From Trichoplax adhaerens (lineage: Eukaryota > Animalia > Placozoa), in the NCBI RefSeq assembly GCF_000150275.1, contig NW_002060970.1, forward strand, positions 208,197 through 272,196: 64,000 nt of DNA, given 5' to 3'. A program made the position numbers and the translations under genes. Positions within the stretch are counted from its first letter, which is position 1. Every line of letters begins with the position of its first letter. Of the stretch, positions 23,782-31,208 are shown one piece after another. Under the pieces are notes generated by a model, which did no database searches, was not told the DNA's origin, and was given only the letters and a program-made list of their open reading frames with translations.

Positions 23782-24657
23782 CTTACAGTACGACTTTTAA
23801 TCATTCTCTATATCATACTACTTTACAGTATGCTGTATATGTAATTGCTCCATATATAACAGCTACACTGTAGTTCATTAGGGGTATGTAGTAGCTGCAG
23901 CACCATGAACTAGTAGTTTATCCAGGACTACGGTAGTTTTAAAAGCGTGTTACAGTGGCCCGCTGTAACTGAAAAACAATTTTATCGATTGACTGATATA
24001 TTTGTTACGATTCGGAGAGTCTAATCAATAAATAGCTTCGACGAAGCTATCGCCACCACCGTGCACCTGTCCGTTGAAGCTTATATCGGAGACTGCTGTA
24101 ATAAAATATTTGTATCTCCAGTCCTATAGTACTGTACTAGTTTAAGTGTATGTACTAGGGACTCCCTCCATGAAAAAAATAATAATTAATTTCTATCGAT
24201 AGTAATTCTAATGATACTGCAGCTTCCATTTCTGCAAATCGTAGACTACAACGGGTCACTAAGTTTTGCCTGGCACATCTCTCTCTCTTGGCTTTATTAT
24301 TATTATTTATTTTTATCCATAGCAGTATTTACAGAACACGGTTGATTGATTATTCACCTATACAACAGTGGAGTGTGCACGCCGGTACAGTGCAACAACA
24401 GTCGATACGGCAGGCACTTTGCCATTTATTAGGAGAAGAACTCGTCTTCATCAAATTCTTCTCCTTATTTCTTCTACCTGCAATATGTTGCACTTTTCGT
24501 TCTGGACGACTCTAGAAAAGTCGACCATGTTGATGACTGCGACAACGACTGATGACCGATTGACCCGTATTGCTCTTGAACCTGTATTCTGCTCAGATAC
24601 GCACGCGCATACCGGCTTGGAGTTGTCTATCAATGACTGGACACGGCCGATAAACGA

Positions 24658-24676
24658 CGTGGACGAATTTCATTGG
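24658..24676 (-). promoter_or_regulatory. ER-stress response element ERSE-I (CCAAT-N9-CCACG on the minus strand) upstream of CRELD
   Basis: Plus strand reads CGTGG-ACGAATTTC-ATTGG, an exact consensus match with a 9-nt spacer, ending 144 bp before the CRELD ATG in a GC-richer promoter-like region. Confidence 0.75.
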
Positions 24677-24819
24677 CGACTTTGAAGTTCAATAGTCAGT
24701 CGTTTGAGTGAATGCCTTCTTGCCCTGGCAGCTGATTGGTGCATCTCCACTTGTAGATCGTTTGGTGTTGCAGTCGGATAAAGTCAGGTCAAGCGTGTGG
24801 TGACTTCACTCCTACAAAG

Positions 24820-27800
24820 ATGGCGGGCAGAAAACATTGGCCTCGATTTGGCAGTTTCTTTGCTTTTCTCCTTGTTCTCCTTCTATGCAATAGGATAGTC
24901 AATGCCAAGGAAGAAGATGAAGATAATGGCAAAGACCGAGTTATGAAACGCTGTATCGACTGTCGTAAATTGGCTGTTTCCTTCGAAATTGTACGTATAT
25001 AATCAATCTGCTTGACCGATAACACTTACTCGATGGTATTACACCTTAGCATGCAACTTCATTCACTACTGTCCAAGATGAAAGCTAGCCAGAAGGATTA
25101 AATGGGTTACTTACTTTTATTATTCAAAGTACAGTGCACTTTACTCATCTAATATTCGTCAATGGCCCGATCATTATTCTTGACAGCATTTCAGAATCTT
25201 GTTTGGTATCCTGCTAAACTTCCATTGAAAAATTCACTGTGTCTGCAACGGAATCTAGTGTATTACTCTGCCAACCATTTGGCGTCGTTTCAAAGACTAT
25301 TTCTCGCTTTTTCATTATTTTCTCTTAATTTGCTTAGCCATTACTCTCCTTAGCCAGAATAATTCAATTGTCAATCAACCCGAATAACTGGCATGACTTT
25401 ATTAATGTGGTAATGTAAGGGGCCCGCTCTCTATTTTCTTTCTCCTCCACATTGCAACTCGCTCGACACAACAGTTAACTGCTTGTGTAAACTTGTAGCT
25501 TGTGTGAACTGACAAAATCATGCAGACGCCGTTTCGTACCTATCGTAGTCCTGTATATACCAGATATACTAAATGGACTAGACTAGTCTATGGGTAAACT
25601 GTGCGTAATTTAGTTTCGTACCTCTTTGCAAATGTCGGTGAAGAATGTTGACTTCCATTAAGTCAATACCTGACGTCAGTACCTGCAATGATTATTCTTT
25701 GCATTCTTTGGTAGCTAACATGATACATGACAACCCTAGCCCTAACATGAAACTTGCAATAATGATTGTATTTTTCTCTTAAGAGCCTCGTAAAATCTTT
25801 TTATATTTCAAAAGATGATGGCTGATCCTATTTCATGTACAGTTACAAATTGTGCAGCTTTGTTACACTTGTGATTATAAATTTTATTAGACTACAGAAA
25901 ACTGCGATCAAGTCAATTTCACGGACCCACTCAATCAATACCACACTGTAAAACTTCCGTGCTAGTGAAATTGACTTGATCCAAAAACTGGATAGGTTAC
26001 GGTATTCATAATTGTCCAAGTTGATTCCATTTTTTACACCTTCTTACCAGTGTTAAAAAATTAAATAAGGGTTATTGGTGATTCGTGGCTGTTGACTTGG
26101 GTTATAACCCTTTGTTACAGCCTACTATCTGACTTCGGCTGTATCTTTATGCTTGGGTTATTTAACCGGGGCTATAACCTACAGCCAGCTGACACTATGG
26201 AATATCGGACATGGCATTATATAGACCAGTCGAACATTTGCTTCCCGAACGGGATGCAATGGTACTTTTTACATGACATTATTAATGATACGGTGTTCAT
26301 GGAACTGTGTGTACGTATTTGCACAATACATCAAAGAACTTAAGAAGTGTATTCAACATCCAGCTGTGAGCTGGATCATACTTTCATGCTTAACTAGGCC
26401 ATTAAAGTTGTTTGCATGTATCAGATAGACTTGGTTCAAAAGTTTCATGTCGGCCTTTCGTTTCTACACTTGCATCTCCAATCGGATAGTGATTTAGCTT
26501 GGCATATTTGCTCTCTGACTTGCTAACATATAATGTGTAATGATATGCTTACTGCAAACCGAGTAATTTGTGCGTAACACTTGAAGTTAATTACGTAGCA
26601 GTATGTATAATCCATGGGTATATTTGCGAAATTTATTCTGTAAAGAGCCTTATGTATAAGACATTTCAGTATATCATGCTATCGTTGTCCATTTTAGGGA
26701 CTAGACTTGACAAACAGGAAAGGCTATGGAGGTGGTGATGTTGTCTGGGAAGAGAAAAAATTAGGAAAGTACGAAAACAGGTATGAGTAAATGATTTAGA
26801 TATCTATGTTTCTTCAGCTGATTATGTGCACTCAAATAGCAATCGTCATTTATTTAAAATCATATACAACTTGGATATTGTAATTGCAACTGCTGTGAAT
26901 TGATGAAGCAAAATAAAAGTTCCCATAATGCTAACGTAACATTGGGTTACACAGATTAGCAAAAGAACTAATTGTTTTAGTTTTAAAATAAGGAGCTGCT
27001 TCTTAAATACCGTGCGAACACATGCTGCTACGTGTACTGTTGTACGATATAATTAAATGACACAGTAAAAACTCGTATTGTTATTATTTCAGCGAATGTA
27101 ACTTTTGTTAGGCAATTTTAAACAAGCTCATTTGTAATATACTAGTTGATATCTGAAAGATCGTATTGTTAACTTGCATAAATGCATACGTGATGGGTAT
27201 AGAAAGAAGACAAATTCAAATGATACTGGTATTTATCATCATAATGACAATTGTTAACCATCTAAATTTTATTACTTTATAGTGAAATGCGTTTATTGGA
27301 TATAACAGAAAAGACATGTAAGCGAAAAGACTTTCAGGTAACTAATGTGCAATAATGATAATTATTACCAAAGCAAACTTTTTGCCATCGCACCGACAAT
27401 GTCTGCTACTTTCCACCAATCCGAAACACGAAGCAAAATAAGATTTTCCAGTTGCAATGATGTACAATGATTACCTTGCATAGCATGAATTGTAAATACA
27501 TAATCTGACTTCACGTGTATCGTTATTCCTGCGGTTATAACTAGTCGTGCACGTTTGACAATGAAACGAAATCAATTATTCATAAGTCCGCACATGTTAT
27601 CATTGATATGGTTACTTGGTTGTAAATGGTATAACGCGCTCTTTTGAAAAAATAGCAAGTACAATATAAATCGTACTGTAGGCAAGCCACTAAACACATA
27701 GTGATTTAGTTTCTTTCTGCAATCCAGATTTATAGCAATAACCCATTATTTATCTTGTATCTAAAAATTGTTAGTGTAATACAATGCTTGAAAATTACGA

Positions 27801-29207
27801 AGATGAAATCGAAAAATGGTTCTTCAAACTGTACGTTAGTAGTTTTAAAGCAAAAAATTGATAAATTGCATTGGTTATGCATTACAATGCTATCGATGTT
27901 ATTCCAATAACGACAAATCAAAACCTGTTTAAATATTGTCATCTTGATTAATGAATGAAATAAATAGGAGACAAGATGAAACAGATTTTGCCGAGTGGTT
28001 TTGTGAAAAAACGCTCAAAGGTGATAAGATAGATTACTAACATTGTGAGGGTATTGTTACTGTTGGCATGTCGTGTATGGTGCATATTTAATTAATTTAT
28101 TGATGCGAATATTTTTATTAAATTTAGTTTGCTGCCCATTTAATACCTTTGGCCCAGATTGTCAAGGTAAAAGAAATTCGATCAGAATAATTTTGTTACC
28201 TAATTTTTTATACAATTATCAACTTTTCTGAATTACTTTGACAACTTTTTGCGCCGCTAACATTAATCTTATTCTGATTAGCTTGCCCAGGAAATGGCGA
28301 ATTTAGTTGTAGTCAGCATGGGAAATGCCATGTAAGTACCTCATACTGAAAACTCCATGTTGTACTGGCTGGCCTAAATAATCGCTTCGTGTCGTTTCTA
28401 GGGAAATGGAACACGCTCTGGCAATGGTAGCTGTATTTGTGAAACTGGATATAGCGGATCAGTTTGTGAAAACTGTACTACGGGATATGTACAAAAAGGC
28501 TCAGAATGCAACGGTAATTATTAAAGTTGATCATAGATTCAGCAGATCTGTATAAACTGATAGAAATTGAATATTTCTTTCACTGCATGAAATATCCGAT
28601 AGCGTGCCACGTATCTTGTGATGGGGACTGTTTATCGGATGGTCCAAAAGGATGTATTAAATGTGCTTCAGGATGGACACATACAGAAGAATTAGGATGT
28701 ACAGGCAAGGATTTGTACCTTTTTAGCCGAATATAACGCCTTAATGATACTATTACAAGCGTTAAGTTCTATGTTGTTACTTCAGCCATTTAATTCTCCA
28801 AAAATGTTGCAAATCTTAATTCAAACATTGTCCTTATGTTCCCTGACAAATTAGATATAAATGAATGTGAAGCTAACGCTTGTGATGTTTCGCTTGAAAA
28901 TTGTGAAAACACGGAAGGTAGTTTCATCTGTACATGTAAAGAAGGGTTCCAGAAAGAAGGTGACGTTTGCGTTCCAGCTGAGCCTACTGAAGGAACTGAA
29001 AGCTCAACGGATGACAGTGCAGCTACAAATGGTATTGTATTTATGTTAACGTTATTAGTCGTAATGATTTTGTCATCAGTTTGGTATAGTATGGGAATCG
29101 TAGCATTGTTAGGTGTTGCCAGCGTCAGTACAGCTGTGTTGTTATCTTTGCAACCAGAAATTCGATTGTTATGCATAAATAGGCTGCGGACACTGTTTAA
29201 ATTTTAA
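24820..29207 (+). CDS. CRELD: CRELD (cysteine-rich with EGF-like domains), membrane-anchored two-TM isoform
   Basis: Exons 24820-24990 (signal peptide, CIDC CxxC motif), 26698-26780 (GYGGGDVVWEEKKLGKYENS, WE domain), 27283-27337 (EMRLLDITEKTC), 27775-27830, 27968-28020, 28128-28166 (CCPFNTFGPDC), then EGF/furin-like exons ~28282-28704. The last exon 28855-29207 carries the Ca-binding EGF (DINECE...CENTEGSFICTC) followed by two hydrophobic helices. Confidence 0.9.
25906..25981. repeat. Short hairpin / MITE-like element in CRELD intron 1
   Basis: Perfect 17-bp inverted repeat GATCAAGTCAATTTCAC (25906-25922) / GTGAAATTGACTTGATC (25965-25981). It is flanked one base out by GAAAACTG / AAAAACTG, a 7/8 direct repeat. 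Confidence 0.65.
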
Positions 29208-29808
29208 TTGAAATAAGATATGCAATCTAGTTGACCTTCGAATTGGCTTTCGTTATGCTAACTAGAACATTTAGTTGATTCTATTCTTAAATAATTGGCT
29301 ATCCGGTCTGAACAATTGCTCAATATTTCACTTTCATTTTTAAAATCACTAAATTCTTGATTTAGTTGGCATATGGTAGTAGTGTGGATTTTAAAATCTA
29401 ATCTATGACTAATTAATGGTAAATGCAGTCATTTAAGGTACTGTATTTATGTATTAATTGTCTTGTTTCCTTATCTTGAAATTACAAAACATTGTGAAGG
29501 TATTATTTTACAGCACGATGTTGTTATTTAAAATATTGCAGTAGATGAATGGAAAATATGTATTCGAACTGCAATTTTTGAATCCTAATTAATTGACTAA
29601 GATCGATGTAATTTATTGATAAAGAAATAGTATGGTGTGGGTAAATCATGGCTACATTTGCATTCTGTTTTTATGTTCTTTATCTATGATGCTATCAATA
29701 CTGTATAAGCTGTGAGAATTTGATTGCGATAAATGAAAGTTGTTTTACTGATTTGATTTCATCGACGATGTGAAATATATTTTCTGATTAAATTTTATAA
29801 ATTTTCAG

Positions 29809-29858
29809 CTGTTGAAGAGGAGAAAGCTGCGGAAGTTGACTCACACGAAGAATTATAA
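29809..29858 (+). CDS. CRELD: Alternative terminal exon of CRELD, soluble ER-luminal isoform ending -HEEL
   Basis: TTTTCAG acceptor at 29808. A phase-1 join to the internal donor AATG|GTATTG (29031/29032) gives ...AATN-AVEEEKAAEVDSHEEL*, a KDEL-like ER retrieval signal. Confidence 0.8.
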
Positions 29859-31208
29859 AATTTGATAGAAATGATATGACGTGTATGCTAGTGAGCTTAT
29901 TTATATTGCATTGATTTGATAGACTTCCATAATACATTTTAATGAAAGATAATTACGAGGAAGTGCTTTATTAAAGCTGTTTTATTGAGCCTACATCTAT
30001 TATATTTTTTCAATACCATCAGCATAAGCCTATACATGTGCCCATGTAACACCAATGTTGCTATAATGATGACAGATGTTGTAAAACTCTACATTTTAAC
30101 TGATCTAATTGTTATGTGTAACTGCCTTGACTAAGCTCTGTCTCCCTGTATAACATGTATAACGATTGCTTTTGATGGTTCATTCCAGTACTTCATTCCG
30201 CGGGTTCGCTTGTAAAACTAAAGAGACCCTCAGATGTTGATACATCCATTCAGTAGTTAGATCATACATACAAATTTAAAGAGAAATTAGTCTTTTTGAC
30301 TTGCAATAGTCGATTAATAGTAATAGATAACCTATGCTAATCATATCGAAATGATATCTAGTCGATTTTATATTAACGATAAAATCCCATATGCTTTGAA
30401 GTGCTTATTAATAGTGATAGTGAAAGAACTTCTTCCAAGTTATTGTGAATTTCATCTATTGTTGTGAATTTATTAACCAAGTTTGCCAAATATGGTATCG
30501 GCTTGAAACAAAATTTTTTTCATACCTTGGGATCGAAGATTAGTATTTTTAATGGTTAGTTCAGGATAATGTGTAGCTTGAAATCACCTAGTACTGCATT
30601 AACTAGCTAATAATTGATAATTAACGGAAGTTCAAATTTTAATGACTCGAAAACTTGTATCTTATCCTGTCGTCATTTGTTAGATGATGAGAATTAAAAT
30701 AATAAATAAGGATAAGAATTTTTTTATCATATATAACAAACATGAAGCACAGGTGTAAAACAGCTTAGGATCTCCTAGATACAGGACCTCTATTTAATAT
30801 AAATAATTCGATAGATTTACCATTACAACAACGAATCAATCATCATTTTTCAATTGAAGTTATACCGTGATTGGTCGCAATAATCTCATCATTACCGTTG
30901 ACGACAAATAATATAATATAATACACTATAGAATAATATACATGAATTCGGATAGACTGCATCCCGTTGCAATAAGCAGCTGGGACTGGCCATAGACAAT
31001 AGATATCATCTTCAATAGAATATCATTAAACAACAGGACGTATCAATTTATTTAAATTAATCCAATTAATCGTATTGGAATACTTGAAATTTAGCATTTG
31101 CAAACTACCGATCAAACATCATATAAGCATTATGCATCCGCTCTAAGGTTGAGATCGATAATTCTTCGATTTCATCCTTGAAAGGAGAGGGAAAATTCGA
31201 TCGACCAC

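What the first reader, a model, noticed from the sequence alone, without database searches (positions are those of the whole stretch)
28855..29858. One CRELD gene appears to encode both a CRELD1-type (two-TM) and a CRELD2-type (soluble, HEEL) protein
Seen: the last EGF exon can read through into two hydrophobic helices and stop at 29207, or splice at the internal donor AATG|GTATTG (29031/29032), immediately before the first helix, to a 50-nt exon (29809-29858) giving AVEEEKAAEVDSHEEL*. Established: vertebrates split these topologies between CRELD1 (two TM) and CRELD2 (KDEL-like tail), and C. elegans crld-1 makes TM and KDEL isoforms by alternative last-exon use. Inference: the membrane/lumen switch of this CxxC PDI-like chaperone predates the vertebrate duplication and may go back to early-branching animals, here via donor use versus read-through.
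Basis: partly seen in the sequence, partly recalled or inferred. Interest (0 to 1): 0.85.

Follow-up and report, generated by a model that had tools for sequence, protein, structure and literature searches.

The report
Trichoplax CRELD gene with two tails
The single CRELD gene of the placozoan Trichoplax adhaerens makes a soluble ER form ending in HEEL and very probably also a membrane-anchored form, an arrangement already known from nematodes that I also find in coral genomes, so it is a tidy but unsurprising extension of known biology.

Summary
The window is Trichoplax adhaerens and 24820-29858 (+) is its only CRELD gene, with 11 exons.

- **HEEL form:** RNA contigs from three studies carry the 29031/29809 junction, which gives the ...HEEL tail (315 aa). 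This form is real and probably the major one.
- **Membrane form, sequence evidence:** Past the same donor (AATG|GTATTG) the frame stays open for 58 codons to the TAA at 29205-29207. The other nine introns stay open for only 3-21 codons. The extension encodes two about 19-residue hydrophobic segments. In simulated intron-like sequence, an open frame of that length with two such segments turned up 12 times in 200,000.
- **Membrane form, RNA evidence:** The same three RNA runs hold an unspliced branch across 29032-29808. In one run hardly anything else intronic was laid.
- **Relatives:** The frame is intact in Trichoplax sp. H2. Coral genomic contigs have the same layout: last EGF exon, G|GT donor, two-helix frame with a stop, then about 1.3 kb on an acidic exon ending HEEL. 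A coral transcript carries the membrane tail.

No polyadenylated membrane-form mRNA or protein was shown. One gene making both forms is published for C. elegans crld-1, so this is a new member of a known kind. Neither public Trichoplax model has the membrane tail, and both mis-model a GC-AG intron.

The parts
24820..24990 (+). Exon 1 (coding part). Start codon, signal peptide and the CIDC (CxxC) motif.
   Evidence: RNA joint 24990/26698 in X4, X5 and X11. Translation. Identical to public proteins P0010 and P0152.
26698..28704 (+). Exons 2-9: 26698-26780, 27283-27337, 27775-27830, 27968-28020, 28128-28166, 28282-28331, 28402-28513, 28603-28704. They encode the WE/DUF3456 region and the EGF-like and cysteine-rich repeats.
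   Evidence: All joints were seen in RNA contigs. PF11938 scores E=1.7e-9 on P0152.
28705..28854 (+). GC-AG intron between exons 9 and 10.
   Evidence: The joint 28702/28853 carries a 2-base ambiguity, so it fits 28704/28855; it is present in X4, X5 and X11. The donor is CAG|GCAAGG. The public H1 model skips exon 9, and the H2 model uses other borders.
28855..29031 (+). Exon 10. Calcium-binding EGF domain plus an acidic/polar linker, shared by both forms.
   Evidence: PF07645 EGF_CA scores E=3.1e-7, 31 bits, above the cut-off of 27.
29032..29207 (+). Read-through extension of exon 10. It begins with the weak donor GTATTG, encodes two hydrophobic helices and a basic tail, and ends with TAA at 29205-29207. 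This is the CRELD1-type ending.
   Evidence: The frame is open for 58 codons, against 3-21 at the other nine donors. Kyte-Doolittle 19-residue peaks are 2.25 and 2.20. GC is 0.35, against 0.28 in the rest of the intron. Unspliced contigs cover 29002-29837 in X4 and X5, and 29002-29373 plus 29421-29816 in X11. The frame is intact in H2.
29208..29808 (+). Rest of the last intron. It would be 3' UTR of the membrane form if that mRNA keeps it.
   Evidence: Removed in the joint 29031/29809. There is no AATAAA or ATTAAA before 29787.
29809..29858 (+). Coding part of the last exon. An acidic tail ending in HEEL and a stop. This is the CRELD2-type ending.
   Evidence: The joint is present in X4, X5 and X11. 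The same tail is in P0010 and P0152.
29859..30550 (+). 3' UTR of the HEEL mRNA. Its end was not determined.
   Evidence: RNA contigs run from 29808 to the end of the laid stretch at 30550 (table 8).

Best explanation
This is the single CRELD gene of Trichoplax adhaerens. CRELD proteins are ER-resident, PDI-like proteins with a CxxC motif, a WE domain and EGF domains. The gene produces two proteins that differ only at the C-terminus.

- **Soluble form (shown at RNA level):** When the weak phase-1 donor at 29031/29032 is used, the last EGF exon joins 29809. The 315-aa protein ends in HEEL, a KDEL-type signal, and would be held in the ER lumen by KDEL-receptor retrieval. The retrieval step is inferred.
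- **Membrane form (inferred):** When that donor is not used, translation runs on for 58 codons through two hydrophobic helices to the stop at 29207. This gives a protein of about 357 aa, anchored in the membrane like vertebrate CRELD1 and nematode CRLD-1A. No exon junction lies downstream of that stop, so the intron-retaining mRNA should escape nonsense-mediated decay.

The choice between lumen and membrane would therefore be made by the efficiency of a single splice donor. The same layout occurs in coral genomes, so it is old.
For: - **HEEL joint:** Present in three RNA studies and absent from X1, which looks like DNA.
- **Unspliced branch:** It covers the whole of 29032-29808 in X4 and X5, and all but about 47 bases of it in X11. 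In X5 the only other intronic piece laid was one 156-base contig.
- **Open frame:** 58 codons against 3-21 at the other donors, with two Kyte-Doolittle peaks above 2.2.
- **Chance:** About 6e-5 in simulation.
- **Variants:** The five seen in the frame are two synonymous changes, V>I, S>T and F>L. None is a stop or an indel.
- **Single gene:**
- **Coral genomic contig L022:** An EGF exon, a G|GTAAAA donor at 764, a two-helix frame to a TGA at 983-985, then an acceptor at 2044 and an acidic exon ending HEEL. In L021 and L020 the EGF and helix parts are also contiguous.
- **Coral transcript P0182:** It has the helix tail and is 98% identical over residues 1-399 to the REEL-ended Montipora protein P0173. 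The two part exactly at the G|GT.
- **Published precedent:** C. elegans crld-1a is 356 aa with two TM helices and crld-1b is 310 aa ending KDEL (PMC6245729).
Against: - All RNA evidence comes from assembled contigs. There is no strand, no poly(A) end, and only rough depths.
- In X4 and X11 other long introns are covered at similar depth, so part of the unspliced branch may be pre-mRNA.
- No database protein or transcript from a placozoan carries the helix tail.
- The two placozoan genomes differ by only 0.9%, so conservation has no statistical power.
- The helix tail has no sequence similarity to the coral one (E=1.7).
- The segment between the two helices lacks the basic residues seen in every other helix-type tail, so the topology is uncertain.
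Confidence: 0.8

Rival explanations
1. Only the HEEL form is functional. The unspliced contigs are pre-mRNA or a nuclear detained intron, and the 58-codon frame is a decaying relic or a chance product of T-rich intron sequence.
For: - Other long introns are covered at similar depth in X4 and X11.
- Both public gene models have only the HEEL tail.
- No canonical poly(A) signal lies between 29208 and 29786.
- T-rich sequence tends to encode hydrophobic residues.
Against: - The joint chance of the open frame plus two hydrophobic segments is about 6e-5.
- A relic would not stay open over the time since placozoans and cnidarians split, yet corals keep the same layout and express the helix form.
- In X5 the last intron is fully covered while almost nothing lies on the other introns.
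- GC is higher in the frame than in the rest of the intron.
Confidence: 0.15
2. The coverage of 29032-29808 does not come from CRELD transcripts at all. It comes from genomic DNA in the libraries, or from an overlapping or antisense transcript.
For: Contigs carry no strand. X1, labelled a guessed RNA run, behaves like DNA, with even cover and no joints.
Against: - In X4 and X5 the short introns 28332-28401, 28514-28602 and 28705-28854 have essentially no cover. I worked this out by hand from the bin depths, so DNA carry-over is small.
- No other gene is called within 4 kb downstream in the H2 annotation.
Confidence: 0.05

Closest known systems
[quoted passage not shown] 2018, PMC6245729)
   Same: One gene and a shared N-terminal body of signal peptide, WE domain and EGF domains. 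One form ends in two transmembrane helices (356 aa) and the other in a KDEL-type signal (310 aa). The sizes here are about 357 and 315 aa.
   Different: In the nematode the two endings are separate last exons, 9a and 9b, each with its own acceptor. Here the helix ending is the unspliced continuation of the EGF exon past a weak donor. The function of the membrane form in acetylcholine-receptor assembly was not tested here.
Vertebrate CRELD1 (two TM helices) and CRELD2 (REDL/HEDL tail) paralogues
   Same: Same domain order. The profile search returns both at E of about 1e-50 to 1e-68. The tails fall into the same two classes.
   Different: Vertebrates use two genes. The Trichoplax protein is shorter, with only one calcium-binding EGF domain. 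The helix tail shows no sequence similarity, and the loop between the helices has no charged residues.
Coral CRELD locus and transcripts (Montipora foliosa P0173; transcript P0182; genomic contigs L020-L022)
   Same: Identical layout: last EGF exon, a phase-1 G|GT donor inside a GGT codon, a two-helix frame with a stop, then a downstream acidic exon ending in REEL or HEEL.
   Different: The coral proteins are longer (443-477 aa), with a lysine-rich linker and a KRSR loop between the helices. The intron is about 1.3 kb in L022, against 777 bases here. The species behind the metagenome contigs are not named.

Membership tests
CRELD family | N-terminal signal peptide followed by a CxxC motif | tested here: met
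   Exon 1 has a hydrophobic leader and CIDC at residues 45-48. The motif aligns with CNVC of P0151. The signal peptide was judged by eye, not by a predictor.
CRELD family | WE / DUF3456 domain | tested here: met
   PF11938 on P0152: E=1.7e-9, 38.7 bits, cut-off 21.1.
CRELD family | EGF-like repeats including a calcium-binding EGF domain | tested here: met
   PF07645 on exon 10: 31 bits, cut-off 27. PF00053 on exon 8: 22.9 bits, cut-off 21.
CRELD family | Full-length similarity to named CRELD1/CRELD2 proteins | tested here: met
   The profile of P0152 plus P0151 finds 156 proteins. The named ones are nearly all CRELD1 or CRELD2, with E down to 1e-68.
CRELD family | Protein disulfide isomerase-like activity | not testable with these tools
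   Only the CxxC motif is seen.
CRELD2-type ending | C-terminal KDEL-type ER retrieval signal on an expressed mRNA | tested here: met
   The HEEL-plus-stop tail is reached by the joint 29031/29809 in three RNA studies. HEEL also ends the Patiria protein P0158 and the coral exon in L022. Retrieval itself was not tested.
CRELD1-type ending | Two C-terminal transmembrane helices after the last EGF domain | tested here: met
   Two 19-residue windows with Kyte-Doolittle means of 2.25 and 2.20, starting 20 residues after the last cysteine of the EGF domain. This shows coding capacity only.
CRELD1-type ending | A mature mRNA and protein with that ending | tested here: inconclusive
   Unspliced contigs span the region in three RNA runs. 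There is no poly(A) end, no strand and no protein evidence.
Dual-isoform single CRELD gene (crld-1 type) | Only one CRELD gene in the genome | tested here: met
   Residues 1-139 of P0152 match only this locus. The other hits are generic EGF domains. A second DUF3456 locus on contig C1381 had no EGF hit in the same search.
Dual-isoform single CRELD gene (crld-1 type) | The two endings are alternative last exons, each with its own acceptor | tested here: not met
   The helix ending is contiguous with exon 10 and has no acceptor of its own. This differs from C. elegans, from the annelid Ridgeia and from a beetle.

The most novel reading that the evidence does not exclude
The layout 'EGF exon, then a weak phase-1 donor, then a two-helix frame with a stop, then an intron, then an acidic KDEL-type exon' is the ancestral animal CRELD architecture, kept in Placozoa and Cnidaria for over half a billion years. 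The separate helix exon of bilaterians and the vertebrate CRELD1/CRELD2 split would both be later derivatives. The strength of one donor would then set the membrane-to-lumen ratio of an ER chaperone.
Probability: 0.45. Interest if true: 0.5.

Novelty: new member of a known kind. Interest (0 to 1): 0.35.

Why it matters
- It moves the 'one gene, membrane plus lumenal CRELD' arrangement from nematodes back to placozoans and corals.
- It gives a simple, testable switch: one weak donor decides whether the protein is anchored or soluble.
- It corrects the public Trichoplax gene models, which lack the membrane ending and mishandle a GC-AG intron.
- In nematodes and mice the membrane form promotes acetylcholine-receptor assembly. 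Trichoplax has no synapses, so what its membrane form does is an open question that can be approached by experiment.
- For the CRELD field this is an expected extension rather than a surprise.

Tried and rejected
- **Whole-library HMMER search with the 116-aa read-through piece:** Multi-EGF proteins swamped it. It gave only the species' own protein, P0010.
- **Word-index searches with P0010 and with the read-through piece:** No placozoan protein with the helix tail was found.
- **ESM Atlas:** Only generic EGF clusters, with a Creld1 cluster at 0.77, which is below any useful level.
- **Metagenome scan with the Trichoplax piece:** Nothing.
- **Look-ups of the RefSeq proteins of Actinia, Montipora and Antedon, and of the Chironomus protein:** None is on record, so no named cnidarian genome locus could be read.
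- **BLASTP of the Trichoplax and coral helix tails:** Not significant. The homology of the tails rests on position and layout only.
- **Scans for a KDEL-type exon downstream in Ridgeia and the beetle:** None found with a simple pattern. This does not show absence.
- **Paper searches:** No paper on CRELD isoforms in non-bilaterians.
- **Not done:** I did not build or search a joined (spliced) protein of either form. Exons were searched by reference, and the full-length queries were public database proteins. The 315-aa and 357-aa lengths are arithmetic.

Full report
**What is in the sequence**

The finding sits at the 3' end of a plus-strand gene.
- Exon 10 starts at 28855, after an AG acceptor.
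- The reading frame passes the donor AATG|GTATTG (exon end 29031, phase 1) and stays open for 58 more codons, to a TAA at 29205-29207.
- The acceptor at 29808/29809 gives an acidic 16-residue tail ending in HEEL, with a TAA at 29856-29858.

**RNA evidence**

Twenty public runs hold the stretch or a part of it. I laid contigs of four runs from four studies on 24600-30550.
- Run X1 has even cover and no joints, so it behaves like DNA.
- Runs X4, X5 and X11 come from three studies, and X11 is on record as RNA. Between them they carry every splice joint of an 11-exon gene: 24820-24990, 26698-26780, 27283-27337, 27775-27830, 27968-28020, 28128-28166, 28282-28331, 28402-28513, 28603-28704, 28855-29031 and 29809 onward. 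All three share eight of these joints, including 29031/29809. The joints flanking the 55-base exon 3 appear only in X4 and X11. The exon 8/9 joint is displaced by one base in X4 and X5, which I attribute to a variant at 28512.
- The coding length adds up to 948 bases, in frame, which is 315 residues.
- The joint 29031/29809 (GT..AG) is present in all three runs, so the HEEL form is real.
- The same three runs also hold the unspliced branch. One 836-base contig covers 29002-29837 in X4 and in X5. Two contigs, 29002-29373 and 29421-29816, cover it in X11.
- Contig depths are only rough. They put the unspliced branch at roughly 10-25% of the spliced one.
- In X4 and X11 the other long introns are covered at similar depth, so part of this may be pre-mRNA.
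- In X5 the only other intronic piece laid was one 156-base contig at depth 3.9, against 28.4 for the last intron. Bin arithmetic shows the short neighbouring introns are essentially uncovered in X4 and X5.
- Contigs give no strand and no poly(A) end, so a mature membrane-form mRNA is not proven.

**Is the read-through frame more than chance?**

- At the other nine donors the frame closes after 3-21 codons. Here it runs for 58.
- The extension has two 19-residue windows with Kyte-Doolittle means of 2.25 and 2.20, followed by a basic 18-residue tail.
- GC is 0.35 in the frame, against 0.28 in the rest of the intron.
- In 200,000 sequences simulated from this gene's introns, 1.6% were open for 58 codons and 12 were open with two such windows.
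- Of 415 GGTA sites in the window, 12 are open for 58 codons and one also has two such windows. I take that one to be this site, which scored as two-segment in the same script.

**Organism, copy number and public models**

- The library search returned P0010, XP_002117825 of Trichoplax adhaerens. Its cluster mate is P0152, RDD37704 of Trichoplax sp. H2, named CRELD 2-B.
- Both end in HEEL and neither has the helix tail.
- The window's genome has 105.6 Mb in 1414 contigs.
- The N-terminal CRELD part matches only this locus. A second DUF3456 locus, on another contig, had no EGF hit in that same search. So there is one CRELD gene.
- The H2 locus (L001) is 99.1% identical to the window. The read-through frame carries one synonymous change there.
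- Variants seen in the runs add one synonymous change plus V>I, S>T and F>L. None is a stop or an indel. With so little divergence this has no statistical weight.

**Relatives in other phyla**

A profile of P0152 plus a metagenome relative found 156 CRELD-family proteins.
- Their tails fall into two classes. One is KDEL-type: REDL, REEL, HEDL, HEEL, KDEL, RDEL. The other is two hydrophobic helices, seen in vertebrate CRELD1, nematodes, insects, a crinoid and an annelid.
- The helix tails are not alike in sequence between phyla. All except the Trichoplax one have basic residues between the helices.

**The coral comparison**

This is the most informative comparison.
- P0182 is a 2.1-kb intron-free contig from a public run, encoding 467 residues with a two-helix tail. 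It is 98% identical over residues 1-399 to Montipora foliosa P0173, which has 443 residues and ends in REEL.
- The two part exactly at a GGT codon that reads AAAG|GTAAAA.
- Coral genomic contigs from metagenomes show the layout directly. In L022 the last EGF exon starts at 623, the donor-like G|GT lies at 764/765, and the frame runs through two helices to a TGA at 983-985.
- After an acceptor at 2044, an acidic exon follows that ends in HEEL.
- L021 and L020 also have the EGF and helix parts in one piece.
- This is the Trichoplax layout, with the same phase and even the same read-through codon.
- In the annelid Ridgeia (L014) and a beetle (L039) the helix tail is a separate exon. In C. elegans both endings have their own acceptors.

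**What is known**

D'Alessandro et al. 2018 (PMC6245729) showed that C. elegans crld-1 makes CRLD-1A (356 aa, two TM helices) and CRLD-1B (310 aa, KDEL) by alternative last exons. They showed that both are ER-resident and that only the membrane form is needed for acetylcholine-receptor expression. They also stated that C. elegans 'and likely Drosophila' have one gene for both versions, while vertebrates have two. My paper searches found nothing on non-bilaterians.

**Verdict**

- The HEEL form is shown. The helix form is strongly indicated, at about 0.8, by sequence statistics, unspliced RNA contigs and a layout conserved in corals. It is not yet shown as a mature mRNA or a protein.
- The arrangement is a new member of a known kind. 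Its twist is that the membrane ending comes from not using a weak donor, rather than from a separate exon, and that twist is shared with corals.
- I did not build or search joined proteins of either form. Full-length queries were public database entries.

Noticed in passing
window 28705-28854: A GC-AG intron (donor CAG|GCAAGG) is confirmed by RNA joints in three runs. The public T. adhaerens model (P0010, 281 aa) skips exon 9 (28603-28704). The Trichoplax sp. H2 model (P0152, 313 aa) uses other borders here ('...EELGY|INECE'). The RNA-based protein has 315 residues.
   Followed up: yes
window 26095-26152: Contigs of X1 (DNA-like) and X4 skip 56 bases with non-splice ends (CT..TG) and a 10-base overlap. 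This is probably an indel polymorphism in intron 1, not splicing.
   Followed up: no
window 29787-29792: An ATTAAA sits 17 bases (29787-29792 to 29808) before the acceptor of the HEEL exon. It is the only canonical poly(A) signal between the helix-frame stop and that exon. It could end a membrane-form mRNA just before or at the acceptor. Contigs cannot tell.
   Followed up: no
window 29079-29096 (residues SSVWYSMG between the two hydrophobic segments): The stretch between the two helices has no charged residue, while the C-terminal tail carries four basic ones. Every other helix-type CRELD tail I saw has basic residues between the helices. The topology in Trichoplax may therefore differ from the usual hairpin.
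   Followed up: partly
G000 contig C1381, 120854-121794 (loci L010, L011), minus strand: A second DUF3456 locus in the genome, above the Pfam cut-off. No CRELD-like EGF matched on that contig in the same genome search. It is probably a canopy/MZB1-type gene rather than a second CRELD.
   Followed up: partly
proteins P0216 (Caenorhabditis angaria, 376 aa) and P0268 (Clavelina lepadiformis, 459 aa): These public models carry both the two-helix segment and a KDEL-type end (KDEL, HQEL) in one protein. Either the two alternative endings were merged by the annotator, or real forms have both.
   Followed up: no
proteins P0151 (273 aa, JGI) and P0154 (254 aa, ENA): Two metagenome proteins are 43-44% identical to the Trichoplax WE and cysteine-rich part but lack the calcium-binding EGF domain. 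One ends in SDEL and the other in a single hydrophobic helix. Their source organisms are unknown.
   Followed up: no
locus L022 2045-2157 and window 29809-29858: The coral and Trichoplax lumenal tails are both short acidic exons that end in the same four residues, HEEL. Other corals and anemones use REEL or RDEL.
   Followed up: partly
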